From the NCBI GenBank assembly GCA_964252035.1, contig OZ176204.1: a stretch of DNA of 64,000 nucleotides; one strand, written 5' to 3'. A program made the translations under genes and the position numbers. The DNA comes from Podarcis erhardii (Eukaryota). The notes beneath the pieces were generated by a model. It saw nothing but the letters and a program-made list of their open reading frames with translations. It searched no databases and was not told the DNA's origin. Below, one piece after another: positions 7,964 to 59,600 of the stretch; the stretch's first letter is position 1; the number at the start of each line of letters is the position of its first letter.

Positions 7964-9247
7964 GCAGTGGATCAGAAATTGATGATGATAAGTATTGATA
8001 ATAGAATCCTATTCCGCTGGCACAGCTGAGTCATATTTACAATTCAAGCTGCACCTCTTAGTCATTGGTTCCCATATGGAATCTCTCTCACTCTCTCACT
8101 TACCTGGAAGGAAGTGTAGCATGGAAGGTGCTTGTTGTACATGGGTAAAAGTCTGATCTGGTGCTCCACCCACTTTTGTTTTGGGCACCACCTGTCACTG
8201 GCAGGTGGCCTCTGAATTGCTGCTCATGAGTTAGTGCAGCCTTTGGACTCAGAAAGGTTCCCCATTTCTGATCTAGACAGAACAAATTTGATAGGTGCCA
8301 GTGCTAAAATGTTTGTGGTAAATGAGGGGTTGGGACTCCTTTTGGCCTGGCAGAACAGATCTTTATTTCCCTCGACTGCATGGGCCAATGTTCGCTGGTG
8401 GGCAGGGTCACTCTTGCTGATCAGATGACTGACAGGTAGGCAGGACCACTCATCTCTCAGAGTTAATCCATTGAGTGGGAAGAGGGGGGTTCAGCTAGTT
8501 GGGGTTCAGTCCTGCTGTCTGCAGGGCTCTACACCCAATGTGACTTACATGTAACAGGATCCCACTCATAACTCTGGCTATGTATCTAAAAAATACAGTT
8601 TCTATTTCAGAAGGGTATTGACGGGCTTATTTAAATTTCAAGAAAACCTTCAAGCTGTTTTCTTTGAGCTAGTTCCACTGTGACATTTTGGCTTTACCAG
8701 TAAGCTTCAGAAACTCATCCCATGTGCGCAGGTATGTAAAAAAAATATTCTGCCCAAGTGACACAGCATGCATCTGGGTTATCTCATGAGCTGAGGCTGG
8801 ATATGTGGATAGGATTATTTACCAGCAACTTGTGCATGTGCACAAATCTAACAAATATTTTGCATTAATTAATGTACCTATAGGATTCATTCTCCAAGCC
8901 ATTTTGTGGTTGCTTAATATTGCATCAAACCTGGCTTTAGCTTCAGCATCTCACTTCCATAAGTGATAGATTTTGTTCAAACAGTTAAATCAAGGACCAA
9001 GTCTCTGTTCTACTGTACTGGAGAAAGCAGCTCTCTTAACCCCCTTTCATGTCCTGGGATTGTTCTCTTAAAAGCTTCCTTTTCCAACAGCACTGCATCA
9101 TCCTCAGTAATTTCTGATTCACTTTGTTCTTGCTTCCCAGTATGGCAGGAGCTTTTAACTTGCCCTGCAGCCATTTTCCTCCTTTGCTGCAGGCAGAGGG
9201 CAGAGCATTTTGCTCTTTTGCAAGTTTTAACTGAGCCTCAGAGAGAA

Positions 9248-9249
<2 letters not shown>

Positions 9250-9305
<56 letters not shown>

Positions 9306-9330
9306 TGTGTGTGTGTGGTTGTGTGTGTTT
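9250..9330. repeat. Compound (CT)n(GT)n microsatellite
   Basis: About 52 bp of CT followed by interrupted GT repeats. Confidence 0.95.
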
Positions 9331-12300
9331 CCACCCATCCCTGTGTTTCCAGAGCATCTGATTTCTTGGATCAGACAGATAATACCAAAAAATCTTCATT
9401 GATCAAATAATTACACTATGGTGCTAAATATTTTATGTGGAAGTTAAATATGTTTGGAGCTTACTCTCACACCAGAATTTTGGCTTCTCAGAGTTAATAT
9501 GTTAAGGTTCCACCCTAGCACTGAACCTGAAACAAATAACCTTTCATATTTATTCCACACATGTGCAAAGTTGCCTTATGAAGTGGTAGTAGTTCATTTT
9601 TCCTGTTTACAGTTGAGAAAACCAAGTTGGGCCTGCTCAAGGTTATTTGCAAATGGATAGATGAACTGGGATTTCACTTCTGCTGCAGGCTGAATGCTTT
9701 ATGCACCAATACGTCTTTTTAATAGCAAATAACTGTTTCTCGTGGTCCTTATGCACATATGAGGACAGGTAGCACTTGGTTTCCTGATATTTACACATTA
9801 TCTGTTGCATGATACTTGTTATCTGTACAGAGGCATACCTAGGCTCCCCCCTCTCCATTTTTGCCCCTTGGCAAGAAAATGTATCAGTACCTCTGAAGCC
9901 AGGAGAGACCATGTACCAGAAACTCAAAAAACTTTATTCTTGTTGCCTTTCATGCTCTGCCAATAACTTCCTCTGCAGCCATTGGCATCAGGTCTGGTCT
10001 GCTCCACCTCTCCTCCTCCTCCTTCTCCATTGGTCAATCCGTCCATCTGCTTGCCTGCCTCCCTTGGCTCACCGCTTTCCCTTCTGGCTTCTTTCTTTTT
10101 TCCTCCTCCTGCAACTCATGCCCGCTCTCTCCCTCTTTCTTCCCTCTGAGCCCTGCTGGGTGCCTCACTCACACTTCTAATAGCACCACCAGTCAACTGT
10201 GGAGGGGGCCCTGCAGGACCCATGCCTGTGACCAGATTCCTCTCCCAAGGTGCCCGGAAGAGTCTGTGTATCTCACCTGGCTGCCCAGAACAGCAGAGGA
10301 GTGGCCCGGGGAGTGTCCAAGCGGGTGGAGTTCTCCTAACCACTCTGAGCCAGAGTGGAGAAGTGTGATTTTTGCATCCCTCTGGGTCTGTGCCCTTGGT
10401 GGCGGCCCAACCTATCTAACCCTTAGGCATGCCTCTGTATCTATATGCATGCAGAAGAGGCCTTAGCCCTGTTTGAGTTGAAGCAGTTCTCAAATTGGCA
10501 AGAGTGACATCATTTGAATAGCACAGTGCAGAGGTTGGGGACAGGGAGGTAGCCTTTATTGGAGTAGTGGAGATGTTGTGCTTACCTGCCATACTTGCAT
10601 TTGTAAATCCACAAAATTCACAGTTTCCCTTCTCAACGTCTCTTTACTGACAACTGGACTGCTCACATACTTTGGTGTTGTTTTGTCACACACTGTTGCA
10701 TTCTTTCAGTCTACAGCTGCTAGCAGCCATCTTCCCCTGCCCCCAACATCTCACCCAGAACCAAGGAGGTGGATGAGAGCCATTTGTTTAGAGGGCTACT
10801 CCCACTACCGGTCTGGCTTATTCCATGCCACTTCCATTCCATCTTGGACAGCAGAATAAAGTAAGCTTGCATTCAGGGCATGGGAAGGAGAGATTCTATG
10901 GTAGGCAAGACTCCCCTTTGTGTTTTGATGCCAGTACTGAGAACAGAGCTCTCTGCTCATAAATTTTACCAGCATTTGTCTGTTTAAGGAGATCTCATCC
11001 GCTTGACATTTGGATTAGTTTCACCCTTCCCTATCCTCATGCTGATGAATAGGTTAGCTGTGCAGTGTGGAATAAACATTGATTAGGATAAGTGGACTGT
11101 TCAGCTGAATTACGGATTCAACCAGCCACTTCTCATACTTTGCTGCTTCTGCCTGTCCTTTCTTACAGAGGAGGTTGGTTCAACTGGACCTCTGCACATG
11201 TCCAGAATTGTGTGTATGGTTTTGCTTTGTTCTAATAATGAGAGAATACCATGTGATCATCACAGGAAGCCCTTATTGTGTGAGGCTGCGCTGGTATAAA
11301 CTGGAGGTACATCCAGTCACAAGGAGGTGGTTACACTGTGACCCAATTAATTCCAAAATCCAATCCAATAGCTAATACATCTAATGCCTTTTTGCATTCC
11401 CTAAGAAGTCCCATTTCAGCAAGGATGAGAGCACCTTGCCATAAATATCTGTATTGGCAGAGATATCCCTATGTCTCCTATGTTTCAGCCTTTGGCACGA
11501 CACTAAATTAACTGAACTTGGGATGCACCATGAAGTCTCCACCAATGTCCTTTGTTATGTAATGTCATTTATGTCCGAGCCTGGACCCTTTGTAAAAAAA
11601 GCCCTTTCAGAATCAGGGAAAGCTATTGGGTCAGTTTTTCCTAAAACTGGGTACATAAAAAAAAATCCCAGTTTGTTCAGCTTTTGGGGAGATGCTTCAG
11701 GAGACAGGAAAACCACAACTTTTCATGTGACCATTTGCCTTTCCTCATTCTTTTTCTCTCCTTAAAATAAAGCTGGATCTTTTAAGAGTGCTTCTGTAGT
11801 GACATTTTAGTAAGACACATAGCTCTTCTGCTGTTTATAAATAATTTCATATAAGCAATTTAAATCTTTATCCATTCATAAATAAATATTACAGTTGCAG
11901 CAACAGTATGGCTGGTTCTCTGCAGCAAAGATACTAATATGCAAAATCCCACAAATTGATCAAGGTTATCAAAGCAAATGCAATTCTCTCTGTGTACATG
12001 TGTAGTGTTATTCATTATGCTTCCAGGCATGTATATTCTGTACAGATTTTCTGATGCCCATACAAATGTTGCCTGTCAAATGCTCATTGTGGGGCAGATC
12101 CTGACATTCACGTGTGAACTCTAATCGACACTGACCCCATGCAGTCTGTGCGGTTTTCTGTTCTCCCTAGAAGTGGGAGATTATTTTCCTAGAAAACCCT
12201 GCTATTCTTGCGAGGGGCTCCTTTATGTGCATACAAAGTCCTTCAAAGAATATTAACAACCTGAGTGTCTTGCAGAGGCCTGGAACTGATGATCCGGAGC

Positions 12301-12928
12301 TACAGATTTGATCAGTTCAGGCAACCTTGGAAAGGAGATCTGTGTGAAATGACTGAGAAACAGGCTGGAAAGGGCATCCAGCAGAACGCTTCCCACTTGC
12401 AAAGCGATTTGAGTGTCACCTTTCCTCGTGGCAGCACAGGTGGGGGGGAGGCTATCACATTCTCCCTCAAAGCTGGAGCTAGCTAACTCTCAGAGGTAGG
12501 GAGGCTGTGGCTCCCCCCACTGAGGCTCACCTTGCAGTTCTGCATTTTGGCACAGCAATGACACTTCAAAGGCAGGTACCTGCCATCTGTCACTGATCTG
12601 ATCCCCCTCAAGGTAGGGCTGCCGCAACACCAAGAAGGTGACTCCAACATTTAAGCTTTGCTCAGGGAATTTATTTGCTCTACGTAGGCAGGTTTAGTCA
12701 TTAAGGCTTATAACTCTGCAAACACCTTACAATTTGAAGTGATTGGTCTGCCTTCCCTGCCTTGTGCCTCATTCATGTACAATGTCACTGCCATTGTTCA
12801 TGCACATCAACAGAGCTGGTATTTTCATAAGTTGTATACTATTTGAATAAAATGATTGTTTGCATAAAGTTCCAGGATGAGCTCAGAGTGTTCCGAATCT
12901 CTCTCTCCCCTGCCCTCCCAATCATCTA

Positions 12929-38400: not shown

Positions 38401-41400
38401 CTGCCCAATGGTGTGCTGGATTTTATCAAGCTCCATCCACTGATGTATGAAGAGGTGAAGCCTGCGGATGGAGTCCCCCTGTTGGTGAAGAAAAATGCGG
38501 TTTATACCCAAGTAGCTGTAGACAGAGTCCGAGCCCTGGATGGGCGAGTGTATGACATGCTCTTCTTGGGAACAGGTAGGTGTGTTTGCATTCCCCATGC
38601 ATATCTAAGTGTCTGTGTGTCCTCATCTGTTAGGACAGAACACACATCTAGGGAGGTTACTCGTTGTTCTCACCCCTCTCAACCTTGTATTGGAATGTAG
38701 AGGAGACAAAGAGTGCAACCCTATTATGCTTTCTAAGCTTTCCAAACCTGTGTTTTTTTAAAGGAGACACAGTTGGGGTTTCTGTATGCTGCAGAGCCTC
38801 CCTTTCCCCAAGCTGTTCCAGTGCCACTCAGTTCTAATTGACAGCTACTATGCTGTGCTTAACACTACTAAGCTGCAAACAGACATACCTGTAAACAGGT
38901 ATGGTTGCTTTCCTCCCCCCCCCCCAGGTCAGCCTTGCTTTTTCTGGCTTTTGCTCTTCAAAGGACAGAGAATCAAAGGTTGATTACCTGTTCTTCTTTG
39001 CCCCTTTTCTGTCACTTAGGCAGGCTTTGTGGGTTTTTGTCTCTCTCGAACATAAAAGGTTATATTCCTCTTAAGTTCTACTCCAAGTGATGCTTTTTTG
39101 ATGACAAAACCCCAGCATCAAATCAGTTCTGGACAATTGCTCTGAGAAAGGGAGTGGTGGCTTCATGATTGCCAGTGAAGTTCCACTATGGAACTTGGGC
39201 AGTTACAACTTTGTGCCTGTTTAGAATTCAGTTGAACTCCTCTCAGAACTACAAATCCCATTATTCTGGGGAGAGGAAAAGAACAGGAAAAGAAGTGACA
39301 AAACTGTTGTCCTGCAGCATAGACTGGCTCTACAGTGTTCAGGCACACTTAGGCTTCTTGTAAATCTGGAAGTAGACAGATCCTCTCACTTGCCAACCAG
39401 ACCCTACACAGGGCTAGCACCTTGAATTTTGCTTGCATGACTGATGTCAAGAATGAGACTGTGTTTGAAATTGCCTTTTTAATGTTTACTCCCCTTTAAC
39501 AGGTAATGGCTGGATTCACAAGGCTGTGGTCATTGGTTCCATGGTCCACATCATCGAGGAGATCCAGGTCTTCAAAGCCCCCCAGCCTGTAGAGAACCTT
39601 GTCATCTCTAAAAAGCAGGTACATGTGGCTTCAGACCCCACCCAAATGCTCTTGGTGAAGGCACACATGCACTGTGAAAAAGCAAAGCACCAACAAGGGT
39701 GCAGTAAACAAATGTTGGGAACAGGCCTATGTCAGCTGGAGAACCAATTCAGGATAGTCTGGACTTCATTGCTAACCTATGTCCTGCACACTTCTCTCTA
39801 CCAAAGTTGTAAGATAGTCACTTTTTCTTCATACCACTGTAACAGGAAAGAACTATCCATATTAGCAAACGCTCTGTCAAGGTGTGGTTCCCTTTTACAC
39901 CTTTCACCTTGGAAGGAAAAAAAAATCATAAGCTTGTGGAACGTGGGTGGTGTTTTTCTTATGTATTCTGACTCTGTGCTGTCTCTGCCAATAGGCAGCC
40001 CTCAATAAAACTGTGCCTTGAGGGTGTTTATTTGGCTTTGCCTGTAGCTAAGGTGGTTCCCACCCAGTGTCCAAAGGCCCTGTCATGCGCTGTCCTGCCT
40101 CGTTGGAGGCCTTTGCTCAGCAGTCTGGAGCTTGTTCCTCCACATTCCTTGCAAAGCTGCACAAGTTTAAAAGCTTCCCTTTCCAGCTCCCAGGAAGGAC
40201 TGCCATTTTTTGTGACTTAACAGATTCAATTAATTCTGTATGCATAATTTGCATGCCGCCTTTTCACCATCCAAACCATGCTCAAGGCGGCTTACGACAT
40301 AAATTCAGCATAACGAAAGAAGTCATAAATAAACAAAACATCAAAAAATACACAACCAAGCTGAACAATTTCCACATAAATCACAAGGTCTAAAATAAAG
40401 ATACACAAAAATCAACAGCAACAACCCCCCAGCAACAAAACACCCCAGCCCAAGAGTCTGTTCAGCAGCCTCAACTGATCCAGACCCCACCCTCACAGGC
40501 CAGGTGGGAAAAGGCTTGCAAGGCAGGGAGCAGGTCTTCCAGCCAATATGCTTTGTGCCTCTATGATGACAAGCAGGAGGGGGGGAAATCACTAGGTAAG
40601 AACCTCCATCCTAGCAAATGCTGCATCTGTTGAATTCTTCAGTTCCCGTCAGGCAAAAGAGCAGCAGCCCTATTTGCAGCTCAGTCCCTAGTTCCTTTCT
40701 CAGTGTGACAGTGAAGGTTTATGCCTCCCTGGTACAGCTGTCAGGGGAATTTGTGTGATGTACTGCAGGTGGGATGATATTTTAGTACTATAATATGTGC
40801 AGTCATGTGTGGTTCTGCAGGCTCCTCTGGATCTTGTTAAGACTACAATTCCCATCATCCTTGACCACTGACCGTGTGCTGGGGGTCACAGGAGTTGCAG
40901 TGCAGCTACATATGGAGGGTACCACATGGGCTAACACCCTTCCTGCTTTCTCTTTGGGCTCTTTTTCTAGGACTGCCACTTTTTTGTTTTTTACTGGCTC
41001 TGCCCCAGTTCCTTGCATTAGCCATCAGCCAGACATGCAAATATTTAGTTGGTTGTGTTTTTCCTGGCTTGGAGATAAAAAGGGTGGAGAAAGCTTAGCC
41101 AGGCAAACGCCTGCATGTCATGCTGCTGTTAAAAGGAAATAATGTAGATGGGACTCAAGGAGGGACTTTTCCTGGCCTTTGTTCTTTCTCTTTCATTTCA
41201 AGCATCTCCCTCCGAGTGGTCAGCAGGGAATGCAACTCTGCCCTCAGACTTTTTTTGATGTTAGGGTGGCTTTGGAGAGGCAGCAAATCTACGCACCAGG
41301 TGGTGTACAGCAGTAGGATAGCCTTGAGCTGGGAAGGATAAATGGCTGCAGGGTGACCCCAGTGATTTACTCTGGTACCCTGCTTCCCTCTGCTGGTCAA

Positions 41401-44400
41401 ACACTGGTGCTGAAGCTACCTGTTACCAACACATGATATTGAATGTACCAGCTATAGCTGAGCCCAGCTTCTATAAAAATCCTGGCTTCCAGTTCTGCCT
41501 TTTAAGTCATTCCAAGGTATGGTCTGAAAGCCACCACCTTGCTGAAGTGAAGCAGGTATAGTGGCTGGAAGAGTGGCTATCTGGGAACAATGTATTTGCC
41601 ACCTTAGGTTCCATGGCAGAAGAAAGGCAAGATATGAATGTAAGAAAAATAATACCGTGTTTTTCCGTGTATAAGATGCCCCCATGTATAAGACGCTCCC
41701 TATTTTTGGGAACTCCAATTAAGATAACACCCCTCAGCACTACCCATGTATAAGACGAGCCCCAATTTTAAACCTCATTTTTTGGTTAAAAAACGTAGTC
41801 TTCTACATGGAAAAATACAGTAATTAACCTGGGCCTTGAAGCATTGCACCTTACATTGCCTTTCAACAGTTAATTGGATGTTTCAGTTCCCTGCCTTTGC
41901 ATCTCTGCTGAGTGCATGTCCTGTCTTTTCTCTCTTTGCAGAGGAGTCTGTATGTGGGGGCTCAGAGTGGAATCCTGCAGTTACCATTTTCCTCCTGCAA
42001 GCGCTATGTCTCCTGCTTTGATTGTATCCTGGCCCGAGACCCATACTGTGGCTGGGATGGTGAGACCTGCAGAGAAGTAGCCGAGATGCTGGACAGGTAA
42101 TTGAAAACTGACTACAAAGACCTGGAAGTGTATATAACACTGTGTACGTGTTGCAGTGGTACCTTGGGTTAAGAACTTAATTCATTCTGGAGGTCTGTTC
42201 TTAACCTGAAACTGTTCTTAACCTGAGGTACCACTTTAGCTAATGGGGCCTCCTGCTGCTGCTGCTGCTGCGCCGCCAGAGCACGATTTCTGTTCTCATC
42301 CTGAAGCAAAGTTCTTAACCCGAGGTACTATTTCTGGGTTAGCGGAGTCTGTAACCTGAAGCGTCTGTAACCCGAGGTACCACTGTACTTGCATGTGGAG
42401 TATACTTGTGCACAAACTGGAGCAGGGTGATACTTTTAAACCTACCCTGTTCATTCCCCAAATGCTGGATATTTGGTTGTTTTTTTAAACAACTTCCCAT
42501 TGGGTGTGTTTGTCCGACTAAGGCAGCCAATGTGTGAGCTCCTGCTGGAACTCCACATGACTGGGACACCAAGTTGCCTGGATGTCCCAGTCAGGCAGAT
42601 GCTCTGCAGGCAAGGAGGAGCTCATACATTGACCATGCTCAATGCAGCTATTAAAGAAAAGATGACTTGAGGTGGGTTAAACATGTGCTCCCCACTCTGG
42701 TCTGTACTCAGGCACGTCCTACATATGAGTAATGCATGCATACAGCTTGCATCCAAGACCAATGTTCGCCAACACTTGGTGAAGCCAGGGCTCTGTTAAG
42801 GCACCACTAATGTGCTTCTGCATTGAGACCTATCCTACATTGAGGTTTATTGGATCAATGGAGTATTAGTTTGTGCTTGTTTGAGACTTAACAACATTCC
42901 TTCACTCTATCCCTCCCTATTGAAAGTGGGCATTTGACAGGACACCCCTGTTATTTGGCTTTAAACATATCAGGGCGTCTCTCTGTCTCATACAAAACGG
43001 GTTAGGTTTAGTGGATTCTGATTTTGCAGGATATCTAAGAAGCTGTAGTCAGCGACAGTAATAAGAATATATTCCAGAAAATTTACATGCCTTACAACCA
43101 TGAAAGTTTTGAGTGTGTGCATGCTAAAATATAAATCCATTACAAGAATCACGGCATAAATGTATAGATAGGGCAGGCAGTTAAATCCTATAGGTTGCTA
43201 AATCCCATAGGAACTCACTGAAAGCCTATTTAAATAAACATGCTTTACATTGTCCCCCCCAAAAAACCCCCCTGCAAACTTGGACTCAGACTGGGTCTTC
43301 CTTAGTAATACCTTCTCTTTAAGACCTGGACTACAGCTGAGCAGCCATAGTTCCATACTCTAATTAAAGGGATCACGCTGAAGAGCTCTGTATTTTGTCG
43401 CTGGAATTGTCTGCTGGCTGTGCATGTGCCCTTGTGTGAGGTGACATATGCAGGTGACTCGGGAGGTTTCAGCAAAGCCTGCAGTTTGTGTTTTAGATAT
43501 TGTGCAGCTGTGCATATTGGGGTGCTTATGCTGGGGAGGGGTGCCTGCTGGAGCATGCAAGATTCTGCCCACAAGTGTATTAATGCCCACAGATTTCATC
43601 AGGTGTGTGCTGCATGCCGGTGAGATTGAGTATCTTTGCGCTGCTGCCTTTCCCCAGCTGATCAAGGTTTTGCTTATATTGGCTTAGGAGTCTGCTGATC
43701 CAGGACATTGTGCATGGCAATGTGGGCTGCTCGAACGACTCTGCCCAGGGTAAGATTCTGATACTGCCTCTTCTGGAAGCCAACGGAGCCTTGCCTCTGC
43801 TACCTTGGTCTGGTGCTCTGGGTTGAGAGAATGGAGGATGATTCCTTCCTAAGGGGAATTGTTCATCTGTTTCCAACCCTTGCTTGCAAGAGGAGCAAGC
43901 TTCCCTTCTTCCCACCCAGACTCAAAGTTTGTTTTCCTTAATTACCGTATTTTTCGCTCCGTAAGACGCACCTTTTTCCTCTTAAAATCTAAGGGGAAAT
44001 GTCTGGAGCGAATGTGTGGTCCCTGGGGCTGGGGGGGCGGGGAGAACCCGGGCTTCCCCCGCCAGCCCCAACAAGCTCTGGGAGCAGTGGGAAGGCTGCG
44101 CTCCGGAGGCTTCGGGTTGCCTTTACTGAAGGCGACTGAATGCACTTTGTTTTAGAGGGGGAGAACAAGAAAAAAAAATTCTTCCCCTCTCTGCGCAGCG
44201 CCCCTTCAGCGAAGTGGCAGGAGAAATGGAAGGGGCTCCGTTTCTCCTGCCGCTTCGCTGAAGGGGCGCTGCGCAGAGAGGGGGAATTCCCCCCCCTTGT
44301 TCTCCCCCTCTAAAACAAGGTGTGTCCTATAGAGTGAAAAATACGGTAACAGAATATTTCCAGCACAGGATTATGTAAAACAACAACAGAAAAACCACAA

Positions 44401-45715
44401 GATTATGGACACAAAGTAGTGCAAATTAAGTAGGACAACATACATTTCTTTGCATTGTGGGTTTTTCTTTAATCAAAATTATTCTTACACTCATTGTTTT
44501 TGCAGTAGGGTGGAGTAAGGGAAAGGGGGAAGAGAAAGCCATGAATGAGGGGTGTTTTATGGGACAGTTCTGTATACTAACCACTCACTATAGGGGCTGT
44601 GCCTATCCCAACTAAGGGATCTAAACTTTTTAGAGCCTGGCCTCAGATTCCCTTTATTATCTGTACTTTTAAGGAGCGCTTTCGCTTTTAAAAATAAAAC
44701 AACCCTCATCAAACCCTTTGGGTGTCCCATCCCCCTCAGCTGGAGAGCCCAGAGTGCCTCTTCCAGAGTATTAACTGGCACTCCAGTCCGACACCTGAAT
44801 TGTTGCGGCTCAGGTAGGGCAGCAATTTGGTGCTTACTACGTGTGTTTGTGTCTCCTGCAGCCACACCCATGCAGAAGAACCGGACAGTGCTGTGTGGTG
44901 ATGACGTACTCCTGCCTTGCGAGCAGATGTCCAACCTGGCCCGGGCGACCTGGCTGGTGAACGGCACCAAAGTGCTGGCGGAGGACGGACAGGGCCGCTT
45001 CCGCCTCGGGGTGGATGGGCTGCTGGTGACGGACACCCAGCCGGAGCACAGCGGGGAATACCGCTGCTACGCGGAGGAGAACGGCCTCCAGGCCCTGGTG
45101 GCTGCTTACACCCTGAACGTGCTCCCTGAGCAGCGAGTGCCACAGCAGGCATCCACCGTGTCGCACCCATACTGGCACGCCGCCAGTGCCACTTACGGAG
45201 ACGTGAGGTTCATCTACATTGCCGTCATCACGCTGCTGGGGGGGCTGTGCCTGGTGCTTAGCGTCGTGCTGCTCTATGTCTCCTGCCTGCAGAAGCGGAG
45301 GGGCAAGTACAGCCTGGGGGTCCCCCAGGCACCCAGCGTGGAGCTGCAGACGGTCTCTTCCAATTGCCTGGGCAAAGGAGGGGAGGAGGAGGAGGAGGAG
45401 GACCCGGGCACCTACCTGGACGGCTGCCTGCAAATCATCCCCGGGGAAGCCCCCACCGTGCCATCGCCCTCCAAGGAAACGCTCCCCATCCCACCGCCGC
45501 CCCCTCCTCCGCTCCCTGCCGAGTTCACCAACGGCATCACCACTTTGCCCAGCATGCTGCGCAAGATGAACGGGAACAGCTACATGCTCCTGCGGCAGAA
45601 TGAGGAGCCGTGCACCTCTCCGCTCTACAACTCCTTCACAGAGGAGCTGAGCAAGATCCTGGAGAAGCGGAAACACACACAGCTGGTAGAAAAGCTGGAC
45701 GAGAGCTCCGTGTAG
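21213..45715 (+). CDS. SEMA4G: Semaphorin-4G (sema, PSI, Ig, TM, cytoplasmic tail ending DESSV); 5'-incomplete model
   Basis: 13 GT-AG exons in continuous frame: 21213-21361, 22488-22550, 22681-22779, 27906-27999, 28639-28752, 29099-29265, 33183-33352, 37430-37574, 38353-38575, 39503-39618, 41942-42096, 43688-43749, 44862-45715 (2411 nt, phases compatible). Peptides match recalled SEMA4G ([78 protein letters not shown]). The first (signal-peptide) exon was not found. Confidence 0.96.
23505..23562 (+). mobile_element. Sauria-type SINE 3' fragment
   Basis: gggtcggacatcactgg...caggggtacctttacctttacctt with the characteristic (ACCTTT)n tail. Confidence 0.65.
23575..23680 (+). mobile_element. Internally deleted Sauria-type SINE
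   Basis: 5' head gggacgcgggtagcgctgtggtctaaaccactgagcc fused to 3' end gcaaccccagagtcg...gggatcctttagcttt; 12-bp TSD AATGGTTCTTTA at 23563-23574 and 23681-23692. Confidence 0.75.
35395..35463. repeat. (ATTT)n microsatellite, probably a LINE tail
   Basis: About 17 units, adjacent to an L2-like end on the minus strand. Confidence 0.95.
36471..36729. mobile_element. hAT-Charlie-type MITE
   Basis: Right end AGGTTGTCTACCCCTG, degenerate left end (ggggcagcaacct), subterminal gggccgcatccagcccacgggcc motif typical of Charlie-type MITEs. Confidence 0.6.
40243..40620 (-). mobile_element. L2-like LINE/SINE 3' end
   Basis: Minus strand reads gtaagccgccttgagc...aaaaggcggcatgcaaa (GCCGCC/GGCGGC terminal stem). 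Similar decayed 3' ends at about 14520-14785, 27060-27150, 35400-35520, 37690-37870 and 59250-59390. Confidence 0.5.
41655..41820. mobile_element. Tc1/mariner (Tc2/pogo-like) MITE
   Basis: Termini CCGTGTTTTTCCGTGTATAAGA / TCTTCTACATGGAAAAATACAG are imperfect inverted repeats; TA flanks. Confidence 0.75.
42154..42385. mobile_element. Tigger-like MITE, family A
   Basis: TIRs CAGTGGTACC / GGTACCACTG, TA on the right flank, body nearly identical to the 12929 and 54028 copies. Confidence 0.88.
43945..44346. mobile_element. Tc2/pogo-like MITE with a long internal palindrome
   Basis: CCGTATTTTTC ... GAAAAATACGG TIRs, TA on both flanks, internal inverted repeat 44147-44318. Confidence 0.85.
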
Positions 45716-52589: not shown

Positions 52590-55319
52590 TTAGTTTTTGG
52601 GGGGCTGCAGAAGCTGCTGACCCACAGCTTCCACATTGAGCTTGCTGGGCTTATTTGTGAATGGGTGCCACTGGCCTTGGATACTGGGATTATCTGTATG
52701 GAAAGGCTTTCGGATACGGATGATCTCCAGGCCAGACTGGCCTGCCAGCTTCTGGATGACCTTTGCAATCTCATCCACTGTCTTGCTGGTTAAACACTCT
52801 ACCTTCACGGTTCCATTCACTAGAAAGAAAATTAGGTGGACAAAATGTGGACCAATTCTTTTTCTGTTTGGAGAAATAAGATTCCCTGGGCACTTAAACC
52901 CAAATCCCAAGGATTTTTTGTTGATGAACCTCAATAAATCCACACATCCACCCTCTTACTCCTGAATGTTACAAACTAAGGCCTGATTTACAGCTCCTTG
53001 GTGTGTAAGTCTTTCAGCAAATAGCACACATCAATTGCTGCTGAGGGTTGCCTTAGAAGCCTTGTTGAGACAGGGTGCACCCTCCCTGCTGATTTTTAGG
53101 AGCAAGTTTCACAGGAAATGCCAATAACAGCCAACACCAATCTCTCGTTAACATGGCTCTAATGCAAAGCTGCATTTTCTATACTTACTGTATTCAGCAG
53201 TCAATGTAGGGACCCTGCACTGCTTTGGAGCAACGTAGAACACAATCCCAGGGTTCTGCCTGGCAAAATCCACCACCTTTTCTTCAATGTATTCTCTAGA
53301 ACAAAAAAGAAAGGAGTCACTGAGGTATTTAAATAACTGTTCTTATGAACAATTGAAGGAGAGCTCAGGAAAAGCTGCCACCACCATCTGCAATTGGGGG
53401 ACTTCAACTGCAGTAATTCCCATTGGGCAGCATTGCAATCTACATAAACTGCAGGCCAGGTAAATATTTCTTCATTAACTATTCTGTGATTCTATACAAA
53501 ATTATTCAGAACAACAGAAAGGACAGGCAATTCCCTTTTGGCAGCCACCTACCCACCTAAAACAGTTAGCCCAATTTTTAAAAATATTAGTAGCATAAAT
53601 ATATGGTACTAGGCAGGCACCCTAGTTATAGTGTTTTAAATGCCTGCTAAAAATATTATTTCAACAGGCCTATCCCAAAACATAGTTGAGATATACAATT
53701 TTAATGTTCGCTAATTTTATCTGTGTTTTACTGATAATTGTTTTATGTGCATCCCTTAGAGGGTCCCCCCCCCATTAAGCAGTTTAAACATTTTTCAAAA
53801 CAGATGAAAATGACCAGATTATAGTATGCCAGAAATAGAAAGCAAGTGGGGCACTTTCTAGAGATGCATGAAGGCCAAAGACTTCAGTTTCATAAATATA
53901 TACTCTTAATAAGCAAGCGAATCACAACCCAAAAGAATGAAAAAAATATTCAAAGCCATCAACCAAGTCTTTATTGCTCTTGGACATTACTTTATTAATA
54001 TGAGTCAGTAATATTTCTACCTGAATACAGTGGTACCTCGGGTTAAGAACCTAATTCGTTCTGGAGGTCCGTTCTTAACCTGAAACTGTTCTTAACCTGA
54101 AGCACCACTTTAGCTAATGGGGCCTCCCACTGCCGCCATGCTGCGGTGGCGTGATTTCTGTTCTCATCCTGAAGCAAAGTTCTTAACCTGAGGTACTATT
54201 TCTGGGTTAGTGGAGTATGTAACCCAAGGTACCACTGTACCAGCCACCTGATGTATAAAGACGCTCTTCCACAAAACACACAATTTCTCATATGCCTTGA
54301 AAACCTATTTGATTCTGAGCTATAAAGCTAAATGTCTAGTGTTTTGATTTCTATATTAAGGAGTTTTTATAGTTTTGTGCAGATTAGGTCATGTTTTGAC
54401 TATACAAATGTTTTAAGTTTTGTATCAAACTAGTATATATTTTATTGAATGACATTGAATACATTGCAGCAGCCTTTGGCTATAAGCAATAAACTTGACC
54501 GACTGACTGACACACATGTATTCCCCCCCCCATCCTAATCTGGAAACTTCAAACTGAATTTCAAGGCCCTAAAAAGTAAGAATTCAGTGACCCCCTTGGC
54601 TCAGATATGAAAGTCAATACAGTATTCCAGTGGCTATTCCTCTTCCCTCCTCCTCCCTCTTTCTTTTTTTGCACCATGTATTTTACCTTTTAATGGGGGC
54701 GGGGGGCAGGGACTGTCTCTTTTTAAATTGAACCATACTTACTTTATCATAAATGTGCAATATAAATTTTTACTTATCAGTCAGTCAATAAGAACTCAAC
54801 AGTGCTACACAGTGCTTTTTTTTCCTTTAAAAAATGTTTAGGGGCACTCTCATTTTGACTCAAAAACACCCTTTTATAGTTCAAATCGGGGGAAATAAAT
54901 ACTACAGTAAGCGGACAAAAGTACTGTACGAAGATTCACAAATGTTTAGGAGTATGCGTGCCCCTGCGTCACCCCAGGGGGAAAAAAAGTTTTGGGGAGC
55001 CTCTCGGCTGAAGGGCAGGGCGAAAACGGCCCACGACTGCAAAGAGAGGCTGCAGCGTCCGCGTTGCGCAGAGCCGAAGAGTCAAGCCCCGCTCGAAGCC
55101 CTTCTAGGGAGGAGACCAGCAAAGGGCGCTCCGGAGAAGCCAGAGCCCCGGCACCTCTTTGCGGGCGGGGGGGGGAGCAGCAGCGTACCTGGCGCCCCGC
55201 GAGCTCGGCGCATCCCGGCTGACCGTCAAGGTGAGGCGCTGCAGCTGCCCCACGTAGCGGCCCACCCCGTTCCTCAAGACGCTGGCCAGGAAGCGGCTCG
55301 GGGTGCCTCGGCCGGTCAT
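52590..55319 (-). CDS. MRPL43: Mitochondrial ribosomal protein L43 (mL43), 155 aa
   Basis: Exons 55189-55319 ([29 protein letters not shown]...), 53189-53295 ([19 protein letters not shown]...AEY), 52590-52819 (NGTVK...[35 protein letters not shown]...*). GT-AG sites; 131+107+230=468 nt in frame. Confidence 0.97.
54028..54237. mobile_element. Tigger-like MITE, family A (MRPL43 intron 1)
   Basis: Same TIRs and body; TA on both flanks. Confidence 0.88.
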
Positions 55320-55538
55320 GGCAGATGAAAGCGGGATGGGAGCAGGTTGGCCGCCTCCCTCTCCTCCTCACCGGAAGGAGAAGCAGCGGAGGAAGGGACG
55401 CAGGGAGGCCGCTAGCGCCCTAGAGCTACTCTGGTGGGAAAGTGACAGATAGGTAGCCGTGTTGGTCTGCCATAGTCAAAACAAAACAAAACAAATTCCT
55501 TCCAGTAGCACCTTAAAGACCAACTAAGTCAGTTCTTG

Positions 55539-55576
55539 GTATGAGCTTTCGTGTGCATGCACACTTCTTCAGATAC
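55539..55576 (-). ncRNA. Minimal type I hammerhead ribozyme motif (mirror copy)
   Basis: Exact reverse complement of 55755-55792 in the left arm; predicted cut between 55543 and 55542 on the minus strand. Confidence 0.7.
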
Positions 55577-55754
55577 ACTGAAACAGAAGTTTCCAGACCC
55601 TTCTATATAGTGAGAAGGTGGGGAGGGGTATTACTCAGAAGGGTGGTGGGAATGGGTGATCTATCTGCCAATCACCCAATCCCACCACCCTTCTGAGTAA
55701 TACCCCTCCCCACCTTCTCACTATATAGAAGGGTCTGGAAACTTCTGTTTCAGT

Positions 55755-55792
55755 GTATCTGAAGAAGTGTGCATGCACACGAAAGCTCATAC
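55755..55792 (+). ncRNA. Minimal type I hammerhead ribozyme motif
   Basis: GTAT-CTGAAGA-A-GTGTGCATGCACAC-GAA-AGCT-C-ATAC: helix I GUAU/AUAC, core CUGANGA, helix II, GAAA, palindromic helix III AGCU, predicted cut after C55788. Confidence 0.7.
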
Positions 55793-56647
55793 CAAGAACT
55801 AACTTAGTTGGTCTTTAAGGTGCTACTGGAAGGAATTTTTTTATCTGGTGGGAAAGTCCTACGAAGGCTCTGACGGTCACTTTTTACGCCCGTCTTTTTT
55901 TTTGCCTGCCCAGTAGAAATAGCAAAGGTCACCGTTAGTCTGTGCACTTAGAAGCGCCTAACTTGCCACGGCCGCCCTATTATACACTCGCCAAGTGCTA
56001 ACGTGGAAATGACGCCTCTATAGTTTCCTATCTCTATATACCTGGCTCGACGTTTGAGGCCAGGATCCCCGCGCGGAAGTGACGTTTTCATGTTGTGTTG
56101 TTGTTCCGGGGCGCAGCGATCGCGCGCTCCCTGCAGCCGCACGTGGGGGGAAGGATGATGCTCGATCCGAGACAGGCGCGGAGCTCTCCGATCGCGCGGT
56201 GACAGGAGGGAGGGAGGGCGGGGAGGTCGAGTTTGGGGGCAGGTGCTGCTTGTTGCAGCGGATCGGGGCTTCCTTCAAAGCGGCCGGTTGCCGGGGGCTG
56301 AAATCTGGGGCTGGCGCCTCTTTGCCCATCGCAAGGCAAAGCGGGGTTATGCGGCGGGACTCGCGCCGCGAGCGAGGAAGTGGTTGGGGTGGCCGGGAGG
56401 GAAGCGGCGAGGCAGAGGAGGGGATGGTTGAGGACGGGGTTGCTTCTCTGATGAAGGCAAGTCTGCGCGCTCGTGCGATTAGGAGGGAGAGGTATTATAG
56501 CAAGGTGAAATAAGGCAGTCTCGATATGGGAGAGGTTGCTCTTGGGGGAAGGTTTCCCAGCAGAGGTTTTTAGTGTGCCAGTCTGGAAGGTTACTGTCTT
56601 GAGAGGATGCTCTTGGCAGGCATCTTTCTGCCACTGGTACAGAAAAA

Positions 56648-59600
56648 ATGTGGTTCCTCACCCGCTCCTTGTTCAGTCTTTCAAGCCACTGGCCCCTTAG
56701 GGGCAGGCTGATCCTTGCAGGGAGCAAATCCTGTAGGTCTTACAAGAAAGAGACGCTTCCGTCCCCAGAAGGGCCGATCCCCCCAGTTTCAGTCACAGAG
56801 ATTCGCCAGTATCTGAGGGCGCAGGGCATCCCCTTTCATGATGGCTATAGTTGTCTTCACGTGCCCAGTATTTTTGTGGAGGAGCAGCAGCAGGTCCGCC
56901 ATAGCTACAGCCTCTTCATCGACAAGACCACTGGCCGCTTTTTGTGCACAGCTTCATTGGCTGAAGGTAACTGGCAAGACTTTCAGGCCAGTGTAGAGTT
57001 GCGACATAAAGGGATGGCTGTGGGTGGCCTGGAAGAGGCCAGTGGGCAAAGAGACCAAGATGGGAAAGATGCCATGCATATATGGGAACGAGCCCTGCCT
57101 CTCTGGGAACTGCTGGATGAGCAGGAGACTCAGGAGGCCAAGGCTATGTTCGGCATTTCCAATGTCTCAAATGCCACACTCAAACGGTTTGGAGTACGTT
57201 ACTTGCGGACAGCGCGGACCTTGGTTTTCCCTTGGTTCAGTCCCCGTGGCACCAGCCTGAAGGGGTTAAAGCTTCTGGGAGTTGAGCGCCAAGGGGAAAT
57301 GGTGCACTATGTGGAGAACACCCTACCTCGCCCTGTGGCCTATCACAACCTCTTTGGATTGCCTCTGATCAGCCGACGAGATACAGAAGTTGTACTGACT
57401 GGCCGTGAGCTGGACACATTGGTGCTGCACCAGGTGACTGGGCTACCCACTTTGGCCCTGCCCCGGGGGATTTCCTGCCTCCCGCCAGCCCTTCTCCCCT
57501 ACTTAGAACAGTTCAAGCGGATCACCCTGTGGTTAGGGGAGGACCTCCGCTCCTGGGAAGCTGCCAAACTCTTTGCCCGCAAGCTGAACCCGAAGCGTTG
57601 TTCTTTGGTGCGGCCAAGTGACCAACAACTACAGCCCCTGGAAGCTTTCACCCAGGGCATGAACCTCACCAAGATTCTGCGCTCCGCTCTACCAGCTGGC
57701 CACAAGTCCATCATTTCATTTCGCCAGCTGCGGGAAGAGGTGCTTGGGGAGCTGGCCAATGTGGAGCAGGTGGCAGGTGTCAAGTGGGCTCGTTTTCCAG
57801 AACTGAACAAACTCCTCAAGGGTCATCGAAAAGGGGAGCTCACTGTATTCACAGGTGTGTAGCTATGTGTTTTGTGGCACTTTAACTCTCATTCTCCATT
57901 CACTCTGTGTGTGTGTGTGAGAGAGGGAGAGAGTGTGTGTGTTCCCTTGTAAATTTCAGCTGGATGTCTTCCCCAGGGTCTCTTCAAAGGATACTGCAAG
58001 TAGCTGACTGACTTTTCATTCACAAGTCATTTACAATCAAAGGCTTATTGAGCCTTCAATTAGAAAATGATGCAGTATGCTTTAGTACTGTGTGGTTCTT
58101 GGCTTTTTTGTTGTTGTTGTAATGCCTGCTTGCCAGCTCAATGACTTGTTGCAGAGTTGGGCTACCTCAATCTGGTGGCTCTTGAGCTGTCCGTTTTTTC
58201 CTTCAGGAATGTAAGGAGTCTAACCTATATTTTGCTATTTTCTGCCTTAGACCAATTTTCATGTCACTACTTGCCATGAATGCTGATTGCCGTTACTCCC
58301 ACTAAATAACTGGGTTGTTTTTTTGTCTACATCTGAAGTGGGTGGTCTTTCAGAAGAAAGGGCGTGTTGGTCTACACATGAAAACTCAAGGTGAAAACCA
58401 TCTATCCTGTAGGTTGCAACAGCCTGTCCTCATATTAATTTTATCCTGTCTGTGGAACAGGCCCAACGGGCAGTGGGAAGACAACCTTCATCAGTGAATA
58501 TGCCTTGGACCTCTGCACACAGGGAGTGAACACTTTGTGGGGCAGCTTTGAGATCAACAATGTGCGCTTGGCCAAGATTATGCTTACCCAGTTTGCCATG
58601 GGGAGGCTGGAAGAGCAGCTGGAAAAGTATGACGAGTGGGCAGACAAGTTTGAGGATCTTCCGCTCTACTTCATGACTTTCCACGGGCATCAGAATATCA
58701 AGTAAGGTTCAGGGTGGCAGCTTCCCTCCTGCATGTCATGGCTTAATGTTCTTGATGTGATGCAGTAGTGGGCATGAAGCAGTGTTCTAGTTGTTCAGAT
58801 GCTAAGGCCGCATTCCTGTTCATATTTCCACGTGTGACCCTTATTTCAATCTTTTCTTTTTCAGGACTGATGATGAAAGATGTGTGTGTAATTGTGATGG
58901 TCTCTTCCATGCAGGACAGTGATAGACACCATGCTGCATGCTGTGTACATGTATGATATCAGTCATGTGATCATCGACAATCTCCAGTTCATGATGGGCC
59001 AGGAACAGCTCAATGTGGACAGGTAAGCTCCCCCACATGCATTCATCCTTTGGCCTAGACTCTTTTTTTACAACACTGTATTTCTCCTCTACCTTCTTTA
59101 AAAAATGACTCAGTGTGTCACTTATTTATAGTGACATGAAAATAATTGTAATCATGCCGGTGTAAACAGTAGTCCTGACTGAGAGTGAATTTCTTCCTTA
59201 ACCATAGATAAGCATTCTTTTGGTAGTGACAGTAACTACAGTTAGGCCTTCTAGTCGTTTTTATGTTTTATTTTTTGTGGTCATTTTATGGTACTGTATT
59301 TGGATTTTAAAAGTTGTACTGTGTTTTAAGTGTCTTGTAAGTCACCTTGAGACTTTTTATAAAAAGCAGTGAACATAATAAATAAATAGGAACATGTTCA
59401 AGAGGAAAATAGTGTCTCTCACTATGAAAATGTGCAGTTCTTCTTTTCATCTTCTACTAATATTCATTTCCCCTCTCTAGCAGGTAAACATCAAGTAACC
59501 TTTCTTTTCAAATTGTGTTCTTTGTACTTCACTATTCATGTGTCTAATGTAATTACTTTTGCTACAAGGTATATTTATTCCACCATGTTGCCATTCTAGG

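What the first reader, a model, noticed from the sequence alone, without database searches (positions are those of the whole stretch)
55430..55857. Young 400-bp palindromic insertion splits a conserved bidirectional CpG-island promoter
Seen: perfect 14-bp TSD (TCTGGTGGGAAAGT), arms of 168 bp with only 2 mismatches, 10-nt loop. The insert starts about 125 bp upstream of the MRPL43 ATG and pushes the ETS/CRE-like site (56074) from about 340 to about 755 bp from that ATG. It is CpG-poor relative to both flanks. Inference: a recent, possibly polymorphic insertion in a normally TE-depleted housekeeping promoter. It could extrude a cruciform under transcription-induced negative supercoiling, yield a long dsRNA hairpin (ADAR/Dicer substrate), or decouple MRPL43 from TWNK expression.
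Basis: partly seen in the sequence, partly recalled or inferred. Interest (0 to 1): 0.7.

Follow-up and report, generated by a model that had tools for sequence, protein, structure and literature searches.

The report
Young Penelope-like retrotransposon palindrome near MRPL43
The 400-bp palindrome between the lizard MRPL43 and TWNK genes is real and recent, but it is the ordinary mirror-image double copy that a very abundant Penelope-like retrotransposon leaves on insertion, and no effect on either gene has been shown.

Summary
A 400-bp insert (55444-55843) lies between two perfect copies of TCTGGTGGGAAAGT. It has 172-nt inverted arms with 3 mismatches and a 10-nt centre. It starts 124 nt upstream of the MRPL43 ATG (55319, minus strand) and interrupts a CpG island.

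It is a true, lineage-specific insertion. Contigs of three other taxa, and the reference genomes of Podarcis raffonei, P. muralis, Lacerta agilis and Zootoca vivipara, cross an empty site holding one copy of the target. An independent contig set of the window's own taxon crosses both junctions at single-copy depth.

It is two 5'-truncated 3' ends of a hugely abundant Penelope-like element (PLE), joined head to head:
- each arm has a minimal hammerhead ribozyme motif;
- each arm has a TATA box 33 nt before the base where most family copies begin;
- only one arm carries the 34-nt "tail".

This is the published PLE insertion signature. This scan has already reported many such palindromes elsewhere in this genome.

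Polymorphism, cruciform, dsRNA and decoupling of the two genes remain untested. MRPL43 keeps its own conserved ETS/CRE-like block on its side of the insert. RNA-like contigs of a relative hint that the site may lie inside the MRPL43 5' leader.

The parts
55430..55443 (.). Left copy of the 14-bp target-site duplication (TCTGGTGGGAAAGT)
   Evidence: The target is present once in four lacertid reference genomes and in contigs of taxa B, F and G.
55444..55477 (-). 34-nt PLE 'tail': the extreme 3' end of the left (minus-oriented) copy, absent from the right arm
   Evidence: It is unpaired in the fold. Another family copy continues from the position equivalent to the right arm's end into this same sequence (loose end in X15 at 55837). 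The literature describes a 30-40 bp tail at one end only.
55478..55495 (-). Short (CAAAA)n / (TTTTG)n microsatellite between the tail and the body. The right arm ends inside the equivalent T-rich run.
   Evidence: Sequence.
55444..55660 (-). Left PLE copy, 217 nt, 5'-truncated, minus orientation (its 3' end points towards MRPL43)
55539..55576 (-). Minimal hammerhead ribozyme motif of the left copy (mirror image of 55755-55792)
   Evidence: Pattern and helix II check. It is the only such motif on the minus strand of the window.
55604..55609 (-). TATATA box of the left copy, 33 nt before 55576, the mirror of the common family 5' end
   Evidence: The joints 55576->55755 in many other copies are.
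55661..55670 (+). 10-nt centre of the palindrome. It is probably the extra 5' letters of the right copy.
   Evidence: Thirteen contigs in X4 match from 55661 rightwards and then diverge into a shared upstream sequence. This evidence is weak.
55661..55843 (+). Right PLE copy, 183 nt, 5'-truncated, plus orientation, without tail, ending in T7A (its 3' end points towards TWNK)
55722..55727 (+). TATATA box of the right copy, 33 nt before 55755
55755..55792 (+). Minimal hammerhead motif of the right copy: helix I GTAT/ATAC (55755-58 and 55789-92), CTGAAGA 55759-65, helix II 55767-80, GAAA 55781-84, palindromic AGCT 55784-87, predicted cut after C 55788
   Evidence: compared with the min-HHR description in PMC4209133. 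Position 55755 is the commonest 5' end of family copies (53-57 loose-end contigs per WGS run).
55844..55857 (.). Right copy of the target-site duplication
55185..55319 (-). MRPL43 (mL43) coding exon 1; ATG at 55319
55370..55400 (+). Conserved MRPL43-proximal block with CCGGAAG and GGAAG(T)GACG motifs. It stays on the MRPL43 side of the insert.
   Evidence: Nearly invariant in five lacertids. The window reads G at 55396, where all four runs and four species read T.
56075..56085 (+). Distal ETS/CRE-like motif GGAAGTGACGT in a conserved block next to the TWNK 5' region
   Evidence: It lies in the 56064-56115 stretch that the RNA-like run X15 leaves uncovered.
56648..57862 (+). TWNK (Twinkle) first coding exon

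Best explanation
The insert is one retrotransposition event of a very abundant, recently active Penelope-like element (PLE) of lacertid lizards.

How it formed (inferred from published PLE biochemistry): the element's endonuclease cut the two target strands 14 bp apart, which gave the 14-bp duplication. Both freed 3' ends then primed reverse transcription on the 3' region of element RNA. One began at the outermost start site and so includes the 34-nt tail. The other began at the inner start site in the T-rich run and so has no tail. Both cDNAs stopped about 180-215 nt in and were joined head to head. The result is two 5'-truncated 3' ends facing outwards, which is a 172-nt-arm palindrome.

What each arm carries: a pLTR TATA box, the usual family start base and a minimal hammerhead motif.

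When and where: the insertion arose in the window's lineage after it split from a relative about 1% diverged. It landed in a poorly conserved spacer between two conserved promoter blocks of the MRPL43-TWNK CpG island.

Most likely effect: it is a tolerated, neutral or mildly harmful passenger. Any effect on MRPL43 or TWNK expression is unshown.
For: Shown here:
- Perfect 14-bp duplication and 172-nt arms.
- Empty site in single contigs of taxa B, F and G (records 23, 9, 16).
- Empty site in P. raffonei, P. muralis, L. agilis and Z. vivipara genomes.
- Both copies of the duplication share a derived G (AAAGT where the four reference genomes aligned read AAAAT/ATAT). The target was therefore duplicated in this lineage.
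- Both junctions are crossed at single-copy depth (21.1 and 20.2) in run X1 of the same taxon.
- The insert belongs to a huge family. 8,800-12,500 contigs were laid per WGS run. Summed word depth is 0.35-2.9 million against about 20-35 in the flanks. Depth is highest at the outer (3') parts of the arms and lowest at the centre, as 5' truncation predicts. The family edges fall at 55444/5 and 55843/4.
- Many other copies are also head-to-head dimers with mirror-symmetric joints such as 55576->55755.
- The tail is the true 3' end of other copies (loose end at 55837).
- A min-HHR motif lies on each arm and nowhere else in the window.
- TATATA lies 33 nt before the commonest family start.

From the literature:
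- PLE insertions are 5'-truncated, often with an adjacent inverted copy, a 30-40 bp tail at one end and an HHR in the pLTR (PMC8557442; PMC3846280).
- A purified Anolis PLE protein cleaves and extends both target strands and starts reverse transcription at two adjacent internal sites that delimit the tail (PMC11167929).
- The min-HHR architecture is described in PMC4209133.
Against: - No reverse transcriptase / GIY-YIG ORF could be tied to this family with the tools at hand. The copy is only a non-coding 3' end, the window has no PLE ORF and no lizard genome could be searched by DNA.
- The hammerhead is a motif match only. No Rfam hammerhead model hit it, and cleavage is untested.
- k=31 contigs cannot span the arms, so the exact interior of the palindrome rests on the assembly alone.
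- The arms differ by 1.7%, nominally more than the roughly 0.9% flank divergence from the relative that lacks the insert. This is within Poisson error. It could also mean that the two arms came from two templates or carry reverse-transcriptase errors.
- The joining step at the centre is inferred, not shown.
Confidence: 0.88

Rival explanations
1. The insert has been co-opted. The left arm's TATA/start block now provides a transcription start for MRPL43, and possibly the right arm's does the same for TWNK. Alternatively, the palindrome sits in the MRPL43 5' leader and changes its translation or stability, so that the two genes are no longer co-regulated.
For: By symmetry, both promoter-like blocks point sense-wise into the neighbouring genes. 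Neither arm has an AATAAA or ATTAAA signal. In the RNA-like run X15 (a relative without the insert), one contig runs from MRPL43 exon 1 up to 56063. The next begins at 56116, and there is no cover over the ETS/CRE motif between them. This suggests the MRPL43 leader may start near 56063 and include the insertion site. A transcript through the insert would fold at -342 kcal/mol and gain four upstream ATGs. An essential gene would then need a start downstream of the hairpin.
Against: No RNA of the window's taxon was available. X15 is only guessed to be RNA, and contig ends do not show transcript ends. The strongly conserved ETS-rich block at 55370-55400, close to the ATG, fits a proximal MRPL43 start that the insert leaves intact. 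The lack of upstream ATGs in the native leader is not significant (P = 0.14). pLTR promoter activity is unshown.
Confidence: 0.12
2. A single PLE copy inserted first, and a later local inverted duplication (replication template switch) made the second arm.
For: Such inverted duplications exist in this genome according to earlier notes. The arms are not identical.
Against: The 14-bp duplication flanks the whole palindrome. The two arms have different 3' ends (tail or no tail), which a copy of one arm could not produce. Head-to-head dimers are common throughout the family and are a published PLE trait.
Confidence: 0.04
3. It is a fold-back or MITE-type DNA transposon.
For: Long inverted repeats and a flanking duplication.
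Against: The termini are not inverted copies of each other, because there is a 45-nt extra end on one side only. A 14-bp duplication is atypical of DNA transposons (established knowledge). Most family copies are single arms with graded 5' truncation and a fixed 3' end. A hammerhead and a tail are PLE features.
Confidence: 0.02
4. It is an assembly fold-back artefact.
For: Palindromes are a known artefact of long-read assembly. PLE structures are known to trouble assemblies.
Against: Independent contigs of run X1 cross both junctions at single-copy depth. The left junction leads into a minus-oriented 3' end and the right one into a plus-oriented 3' end, so two opposed copies must be present. 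An artefact would not make a perfect target duplication.
Confidence: 0.02

Closest known systems
Head-to-head (inverted pLTR) insertions of endonuclease-positive Penelope-like elements (Penelope/Poseidon-type; Evgen'ev & Arkhipova 2005, Arkhipova 2013, Craig 2021)
   Same: 5'-truncated copies joined in inverted orientation with 3' ends outward; a short target duplication; a roughly 30-40 nt tail at only one end; a hammerhead motif and a TATA box in the pLTR; very high copy number in a non-avian reptile.
   Different: This copy holds only about 200 nt of non-coding 3' end per arm, so no ORF is present. The 14-bp duplication is longer than the 8-10 bp reported for rotifer copies. The link to an RT/GIY-YIG ORF was not shown here.
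Poseidon of Anolis carolinensis (PAc), biochemically characterised (PMC11167929)
   Same: A lizard PLE with a hammerhead at the pLTR. Two reverse-transcription start sites define the tail. The protein cuts and extends both target strands, which can explain an outward-facing double copy.
   Different: There was no evident similarity, by eye only, to the one short PAc oligonucleotide fragment quoted in that paper's methods; no alignment was run. In PAc the ORF start lies in helix II with the cut 26 bp downstream. Here the ATG in helix II is followed by a stop after 9 codons in both arms.
Minimal hammerhead ribozymes of metazoan PLEs (Cervera & de la Pena 2014)
   Same: CUGANGA core, an unpaired base before a long helix II, GAAA, a 4-bp helix I, and no helix III but a palindromic AGCU that could pair in a dimer.
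   Different: Cleavage is untested. In this palindrome the two motifs are on opposite strands, so one transcript would carry one sense and one antisense copy and could not form the active dimer in cis.
Twin priming inversions of LINE-1
   Same: Both nicked target strands prime reverse transcription, giving an inverted structure inside one target duplication.
   Different: Twin priming joins two different, non-overlapping parts of the RNA. Here both arms copy the same 3' region, giving a true palindrome.

Membership tests
Penelope-like element (PLE) insertion | Autonomous relatives encode a PLE-type reverse transcriptase with a GIY-YIG endonuclease | not testable with these tools
   The copy is a non-coding 3' end. 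No PLE ORF was found among the window's ORFs of 150 aa or more. Two metagenome scans gave only chance 18-24-nt matches. Earlier notes of this scan report GIY-YIG PLEs in this genome, but these were not checked here.
Penelope-like element (PLE) insertion | An inverted 5'-truncated copy adjacent to another copy, giving head-to-head inverted repeats | tested here: met
   Arms at 55489-55660 and 55671-55842 with 3' ends outward. Many other family copies show mirror-symmetric head-to-head joints.
Penelope-like element (PLE) insertion | A 30-40 bp 'tail' extension present at only one end | tested here: met
   34 nt (55444-55477) plus a short microsatellite at the left end only. Other copies continue into the same tail. 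Compare.
Penelope-like element (PLE) insertion | A hammerhead ribozyme motif in the pLTR | tested here: met
   A min-HHR motif on each arm. This is a motif match only. No Rfam hammerhead hit appeared at E <= 10.
Penelope-like element (PLE) insertion | A short target-site duplication, confirmed by an empty site | tested here: met
   14 bp. The target occurs once in seven other data sets.
Penelope-like element (PLE) insertion | Strong 5' truncation across the family, with a common 3' end | tested here: met
   The depth profile and loose ends.
Minimal hammerhead ribozyme (type I, dimer-dependent) | Conserved core CUGANGA ... GAAA ... UH with helices I and II | tested here: met
   Position 55759 C; helix II 5-6 bp; GAAA at 55781-84; U 55787, C 55788; helix I 4 bp.
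Minimal hammerhead ribozyme (type I, dimer-dependent) | Self-cleavage | not testable with these tools
   Needs an in vitro transcription and cleavage assay of a tandem dimer.
MITE / fold-back DNA transposon | Terminal inverted repeats reaching both ends of the element | tested here: not met
   The left 45 nt have no partner at the right end.
tRNA-, 7SL- or 5S-derived SINE | A Pol III-type head related to a small RNA gene | tested here: not met
   No tRNA was found. Rfam gave only sub-threshold generic hairpin matches to miRNA models.
MRPL43-TWNK bidirectional promoter | Head-to-head genes sharing a CpG-rich intergenic region with conserved motifs | tested here: met
   Gene identities are, the CpG profile, and conservation in five lacertids. 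A conserved bidirectional promoter is reported for cattle (Meersseman 2014, cited in PMC9818230). Transcription starts were not determined here.

The most novel reading that the evidence does not exclude
The insertion landed inside the transcribed 5' leader of the essential MRPL43 gene. The gene is kept working because the element's own left-arm pLTR promoter (start near 55576), or a proximal start below the insert, now drives it. That would be a very recent replacement of a housekeeping core promoter by a Penelope-like element, uncoupling MRPL43 from the shared TWNK promoter.
Probability: 0.1. Interest if true: 0.6.

Novelty: new member of a known kind. Interest (0 to 1): 0.3.

Why it matters
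As a structure it is a textbook PLE insertion and adds nothing new about the class. Its value is as a clean, dated natural experiment. A 400-bp palindrome that is CpG-poor, carries two promoter-like blocks and bears ribozyme motifs was dropped very recently into the CpG island between two essential mitochondrial genes. Closely related taxa keep the empty site. Comparing transcription starts, methylation and expression between the two states would show how much disruption a housekeeping bidirectional promoter tolerates. It would also show whether PLE pLTR promoters fire in a host-gene context.

Tried and rejected
- **Rfam at E <= 10 on 55300-56000.** It gave only sub-threshold miRNA-model matches, as any long perfect hairpin does, and no hammerhead model.
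- **ARAGORN.** No tRNA-like head.
- **Other copies in the window.** None were found by pattern search or sensitive blastn.
- **Two metagenome scans, to find longer copies with an ORF.** The hammerhead core gave 0 hits. The tail 18-mer gave 17 hits, all matching over only 18-24 nt, so they are chance.
- **Pfam on all window ORFs of 150 aa or more.** No RT or GIY-YIG; only Sema/Ig exons.
- **Earlier-findings look-up by sequence.** Blank.
- **Upstream-ATG depletion in the native MRPL43 leader.** Zero ATG in 330 nt, but P = 0.14 under a first-order model, so it was dropped as evidence.
- **Blastn of the insert against about 50 kb of four lacertid loci.** No copies.
- **The Meersseman 2014 paper.** Not held.
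- **First attempts at the MRPL43 exon.** They used a frame off by one and were corrected.
- The MRPL43 coding exon was deliberately left out of the stretch given to read laying.

Full report
**1. Observation**

The sequence is as described. TCTGGTGGGAAAGT occurs at 55430-55443 and 55844-55857 and nowhere else in the window, even with one mismatch allowed. Between the two copies lie 400 bp (55444-55843). The inverted arms are 55489-55660 and 55671-55842: 172 nt, three mismatches (55492, 55530, 55652) and a 10-nt centre. As single-stranded DNA it folds at -214.7 kcal/mol (z = -41.5). As RNA it folds at about -340 kcal/mol on either strand.

The left end has 45 unpaired nt: a 34-nt unique stretch (55444-55477), followed by the first 11 nt of a (CAAAA)n run that continues into the left arm. 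The right arm stops in a T7A run.

**2. Gene context**

- The minus-strand ATG at 55319 opens an exon whose 45 residues match mitoribosomal protein mL43 (E = 2e-17).
- The ORF 56648-57862 is the first coding exon of Twinkle (E = 1.6e-165 to PDB chains). It is 99% identical to the Podarcis raffonei protein.
- The insert begins 124 nt upstream of the MRPL43 ATG.
- CpG observed/expected is 0.16 in the insert. It is 0.57-1.04 in the flanking 54950-56450 and 0.27 in bulk sequence. The insert does interrupt one CpG island.
- A conserved MRPL43/TWNK bidirectional promoter is reported for cattle (Meersseman et al. 2014, cited in PMC9818230). I could not read that paper.

**3. It is a real, lineage-specific insertion**

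I laid Logan contigs of four runs on 55325-56600.

Single contigs of three other taxa cross an empty site:

| Taxon | Record | Window positions either side of the empty site |
|---|---|---|
| B | 23 | 55429 \| 55844 |
| F | 9 | 55430 \| 55846 |
| G | 16 | 55433 \| 55848 |

Each pair of positions is contiguous in its record. Flank divergence from the window is about 1% for B, 6% for F and 7% for G.

I then fetched the orthologous loci of Podarcis raffonei, P. muralis, Lacerta agilis and Zootoca vivipara through their Twinkle proteins. All four have the target once and no insert. Both copies of the duplication in the window share a derived G (AAAGT, where all four species have A). The target was therefore duplicated within this lineage.

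In run X1 of the window's own taxon, a 600-bp contig crosses the left junction (55325-55472) and a 6.7-kb contig crosses the right one (55820-56600). Their depths are 21.1 and 20.2, the same as the unique flanks. The insert is therefore present, with no sign of an empty allele in that sample. X1 differs from the window at 55396, 55409 and 55421, so it is not simply the same haplotype.

This excludes an assembly fold-back. However, k=31 contigs cannot span the arms, so the exact interior still rests on the assembly.

The window is about as far from each Podarcis species (93-94% identity) as those two are from each other. The run names are coded, and I did not try to decode them.

**4. What the insert is**

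The insert belongs to an enormous repeat family.
- 8,800-12,500 contigs per whole-genome run match it.
- Summed word depth is 0.35-2.9 million, against 20-35 in the flanks.
- Depth is greatest over the outer parts of both arms and least at the centre. This is the profile of a retroelement family with a fixed 3' end and graded 5' truncation.
- Family homology stops at 55444/5 and 55843/4, which are loose ends with no consensus.
- The commonest internal 5' end is 55755 (53-57 contigs per run).
- Many copies elsewhere are themselves head-to-head dimers with mirror-symmetric joints, such as 55576->55755. The mirror axis is 55665.5.
- One listed copy continues past the position equivalent to the right arm's end into the tail sequence. 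The tail is therefore the family's true 3' end, and the right arm lacks it (X15 at 55837).

A lead from earlier notes of this scan pointed to Penelope-like elements, and I tested the class features directly.
- Each arm carries a minimal hammerhead motif. On the plus strand it reads GTAT-CTGAAGA-A-GTGTGCATGCACAC-GAAA-GCTC|ATAC at 55755-55792.
- These are the only such motifs in the window.
- The architecture matches that published for metazoan PLEs: a 4-5 bp helix I, a long helix II after an unpaired base, and no helix III but a palindromic AGCU for dimer pairing (PMC4209133).
- TATATA lies 33 nt before the common start base on each arm. pLTR TATA/Inr pairs are described for PLEs (PMC3846280).
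- The combination of 5'-truncated copies, an adjacent inverted copy, a 30-40 bp tail at one end only and an HHR in the pLTR is the published PLE insertion signature (PMC8557442).

What I could not show is the link to an RT/GIY-YIG ORF. The copy is non-coding, the window has no PLE ORF, and two metagenome scans gave only chance matches.

**5. How it formed (inferred)**

A purified Anolis PLE protein cleaves and extends both target strands. It initiates reverse transcription at two adjacent internal sites whose spacing is the tail (PMC11167929).

Applied here, staggered cuts 14 bp apart gave the duplication. The top strand primed a cDNA from the outer site, giving the left, minus-oriented copy with the tail. 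The bottom strand primed from the inner, T-rich site, giving the right, plus-oriented copy without the tail. The two cDNAs ended within 10 nt of each other and were joined.

The 10-nt centre seems to belong to the right copy, on weak evidence (13 contigs). A snap-back of a single cDNA cannot explain arms with different 3' ends.

The arms differ by 3 in 172 nt. Flank divergence from the insert-free relative is about 0.9%. The two figures are compatible within Poisson error. Two templates or reverse-transcriptase errors could also explain the arm differences.

**6. Effect on the host genes (open)**

The alignment of five lacertids shows two strongly conserved blocks.
- One lies next to the MRPL43 ATG, at 55320-55429. 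It includes CCGGAAG and GGAAGTGACG.
- One lies next to TWNK, at about 56025-56150.

The insertion site falls in a variable spacer at the edge of the first block. MRPL43 therefore keeps its own conserved motifs, which weakens the decoupling idea.

Against that, run X15 is RNA-like. Its ratio of repeat depth to single-copy depth is about 300, whereas the whole-genome runs have about 100,000. In X15 one contig runs from MRPL43 exon 1 to 56063 and another runs from 56116 onward, with no cover between them. If these reflect transcripts, the MRPL43 leader includes the insertion site. A read-through RNA would then carry a -342 kcal/mol hairpin and four new upstream ATGs. The outward-facing pLTR promoters could then matter.

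Contig ends are not transcript ends, and X15 is only guessed to be RNA. I give this reading about 10-12%.

In this palindrome the two hammerhead motifs are on opposite strands, so they cannot form the active dimer in cis.

**7. Verdict**

The inference of a recent insertion is confirmed and sharpened: the site is empty in seven other data sets.

The palindrome is the ordinary product of a Penelope-like element. This scan has already reported many such palindromes elsewhere in this genome, including another in a divergent promoter gap about 0.9 Mb away. Those notes were leads only. The functional ideas remain untested.

Noticed in passing
window 55396: The window reads G where all four laid runs (including the same taxon) and four lacertid genomes read T. 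The change falls in the conserved MRPL43-proximal GGAAGTGACG motif. It is either a private allele or an assembly error.
   Followed up: partly
window 55391-55400 and 56076-85: The same composite ETS/CRE-like motif (GGAAGTGACG) occurs twice, in the same orientation, at the two ends of the MRPL43-TWNK intergenic region. Both copies lie in blocks conserved across lacertids.
   Followed up: partly
window 56064-56115: The RNA-like run X15 has no cover over exactly these 52 nt, which hold the distal ETS/CRE motif. Contigs abut on both sides. This would fit divergent transcription starts at about 56063 and 56116.
   Followed up: no
window 56379: Taxa F and G carry 26 extra letters (GCGGCGAGAGGGCGAGTCCCTGCGAG) after this position. 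This is likely a deletion in the window's lineage within the GC-rich TWNK 5' region. There are also 8-nt indels at 56204/5.
   Followed up: no
window 39526-45715: ORFs here have weak Sema, Sema4F_C and Ig-domain matches (all below Pfam's curated score cut-offs), so a semaphorin-4-type gene lies upstream of MRPL43. From my own knowledge, this matches the human SEMA4G-MRPL43-TWNK order.
   Followed up: no
window 55755 / 55576: Most family copies in all runs begin at the first base of hammerhead helix I, 33 nt after a TATA box. Transcripts of the element probably start there, and not at the ribozyme cut site (55788/9).
   Followed up: partly
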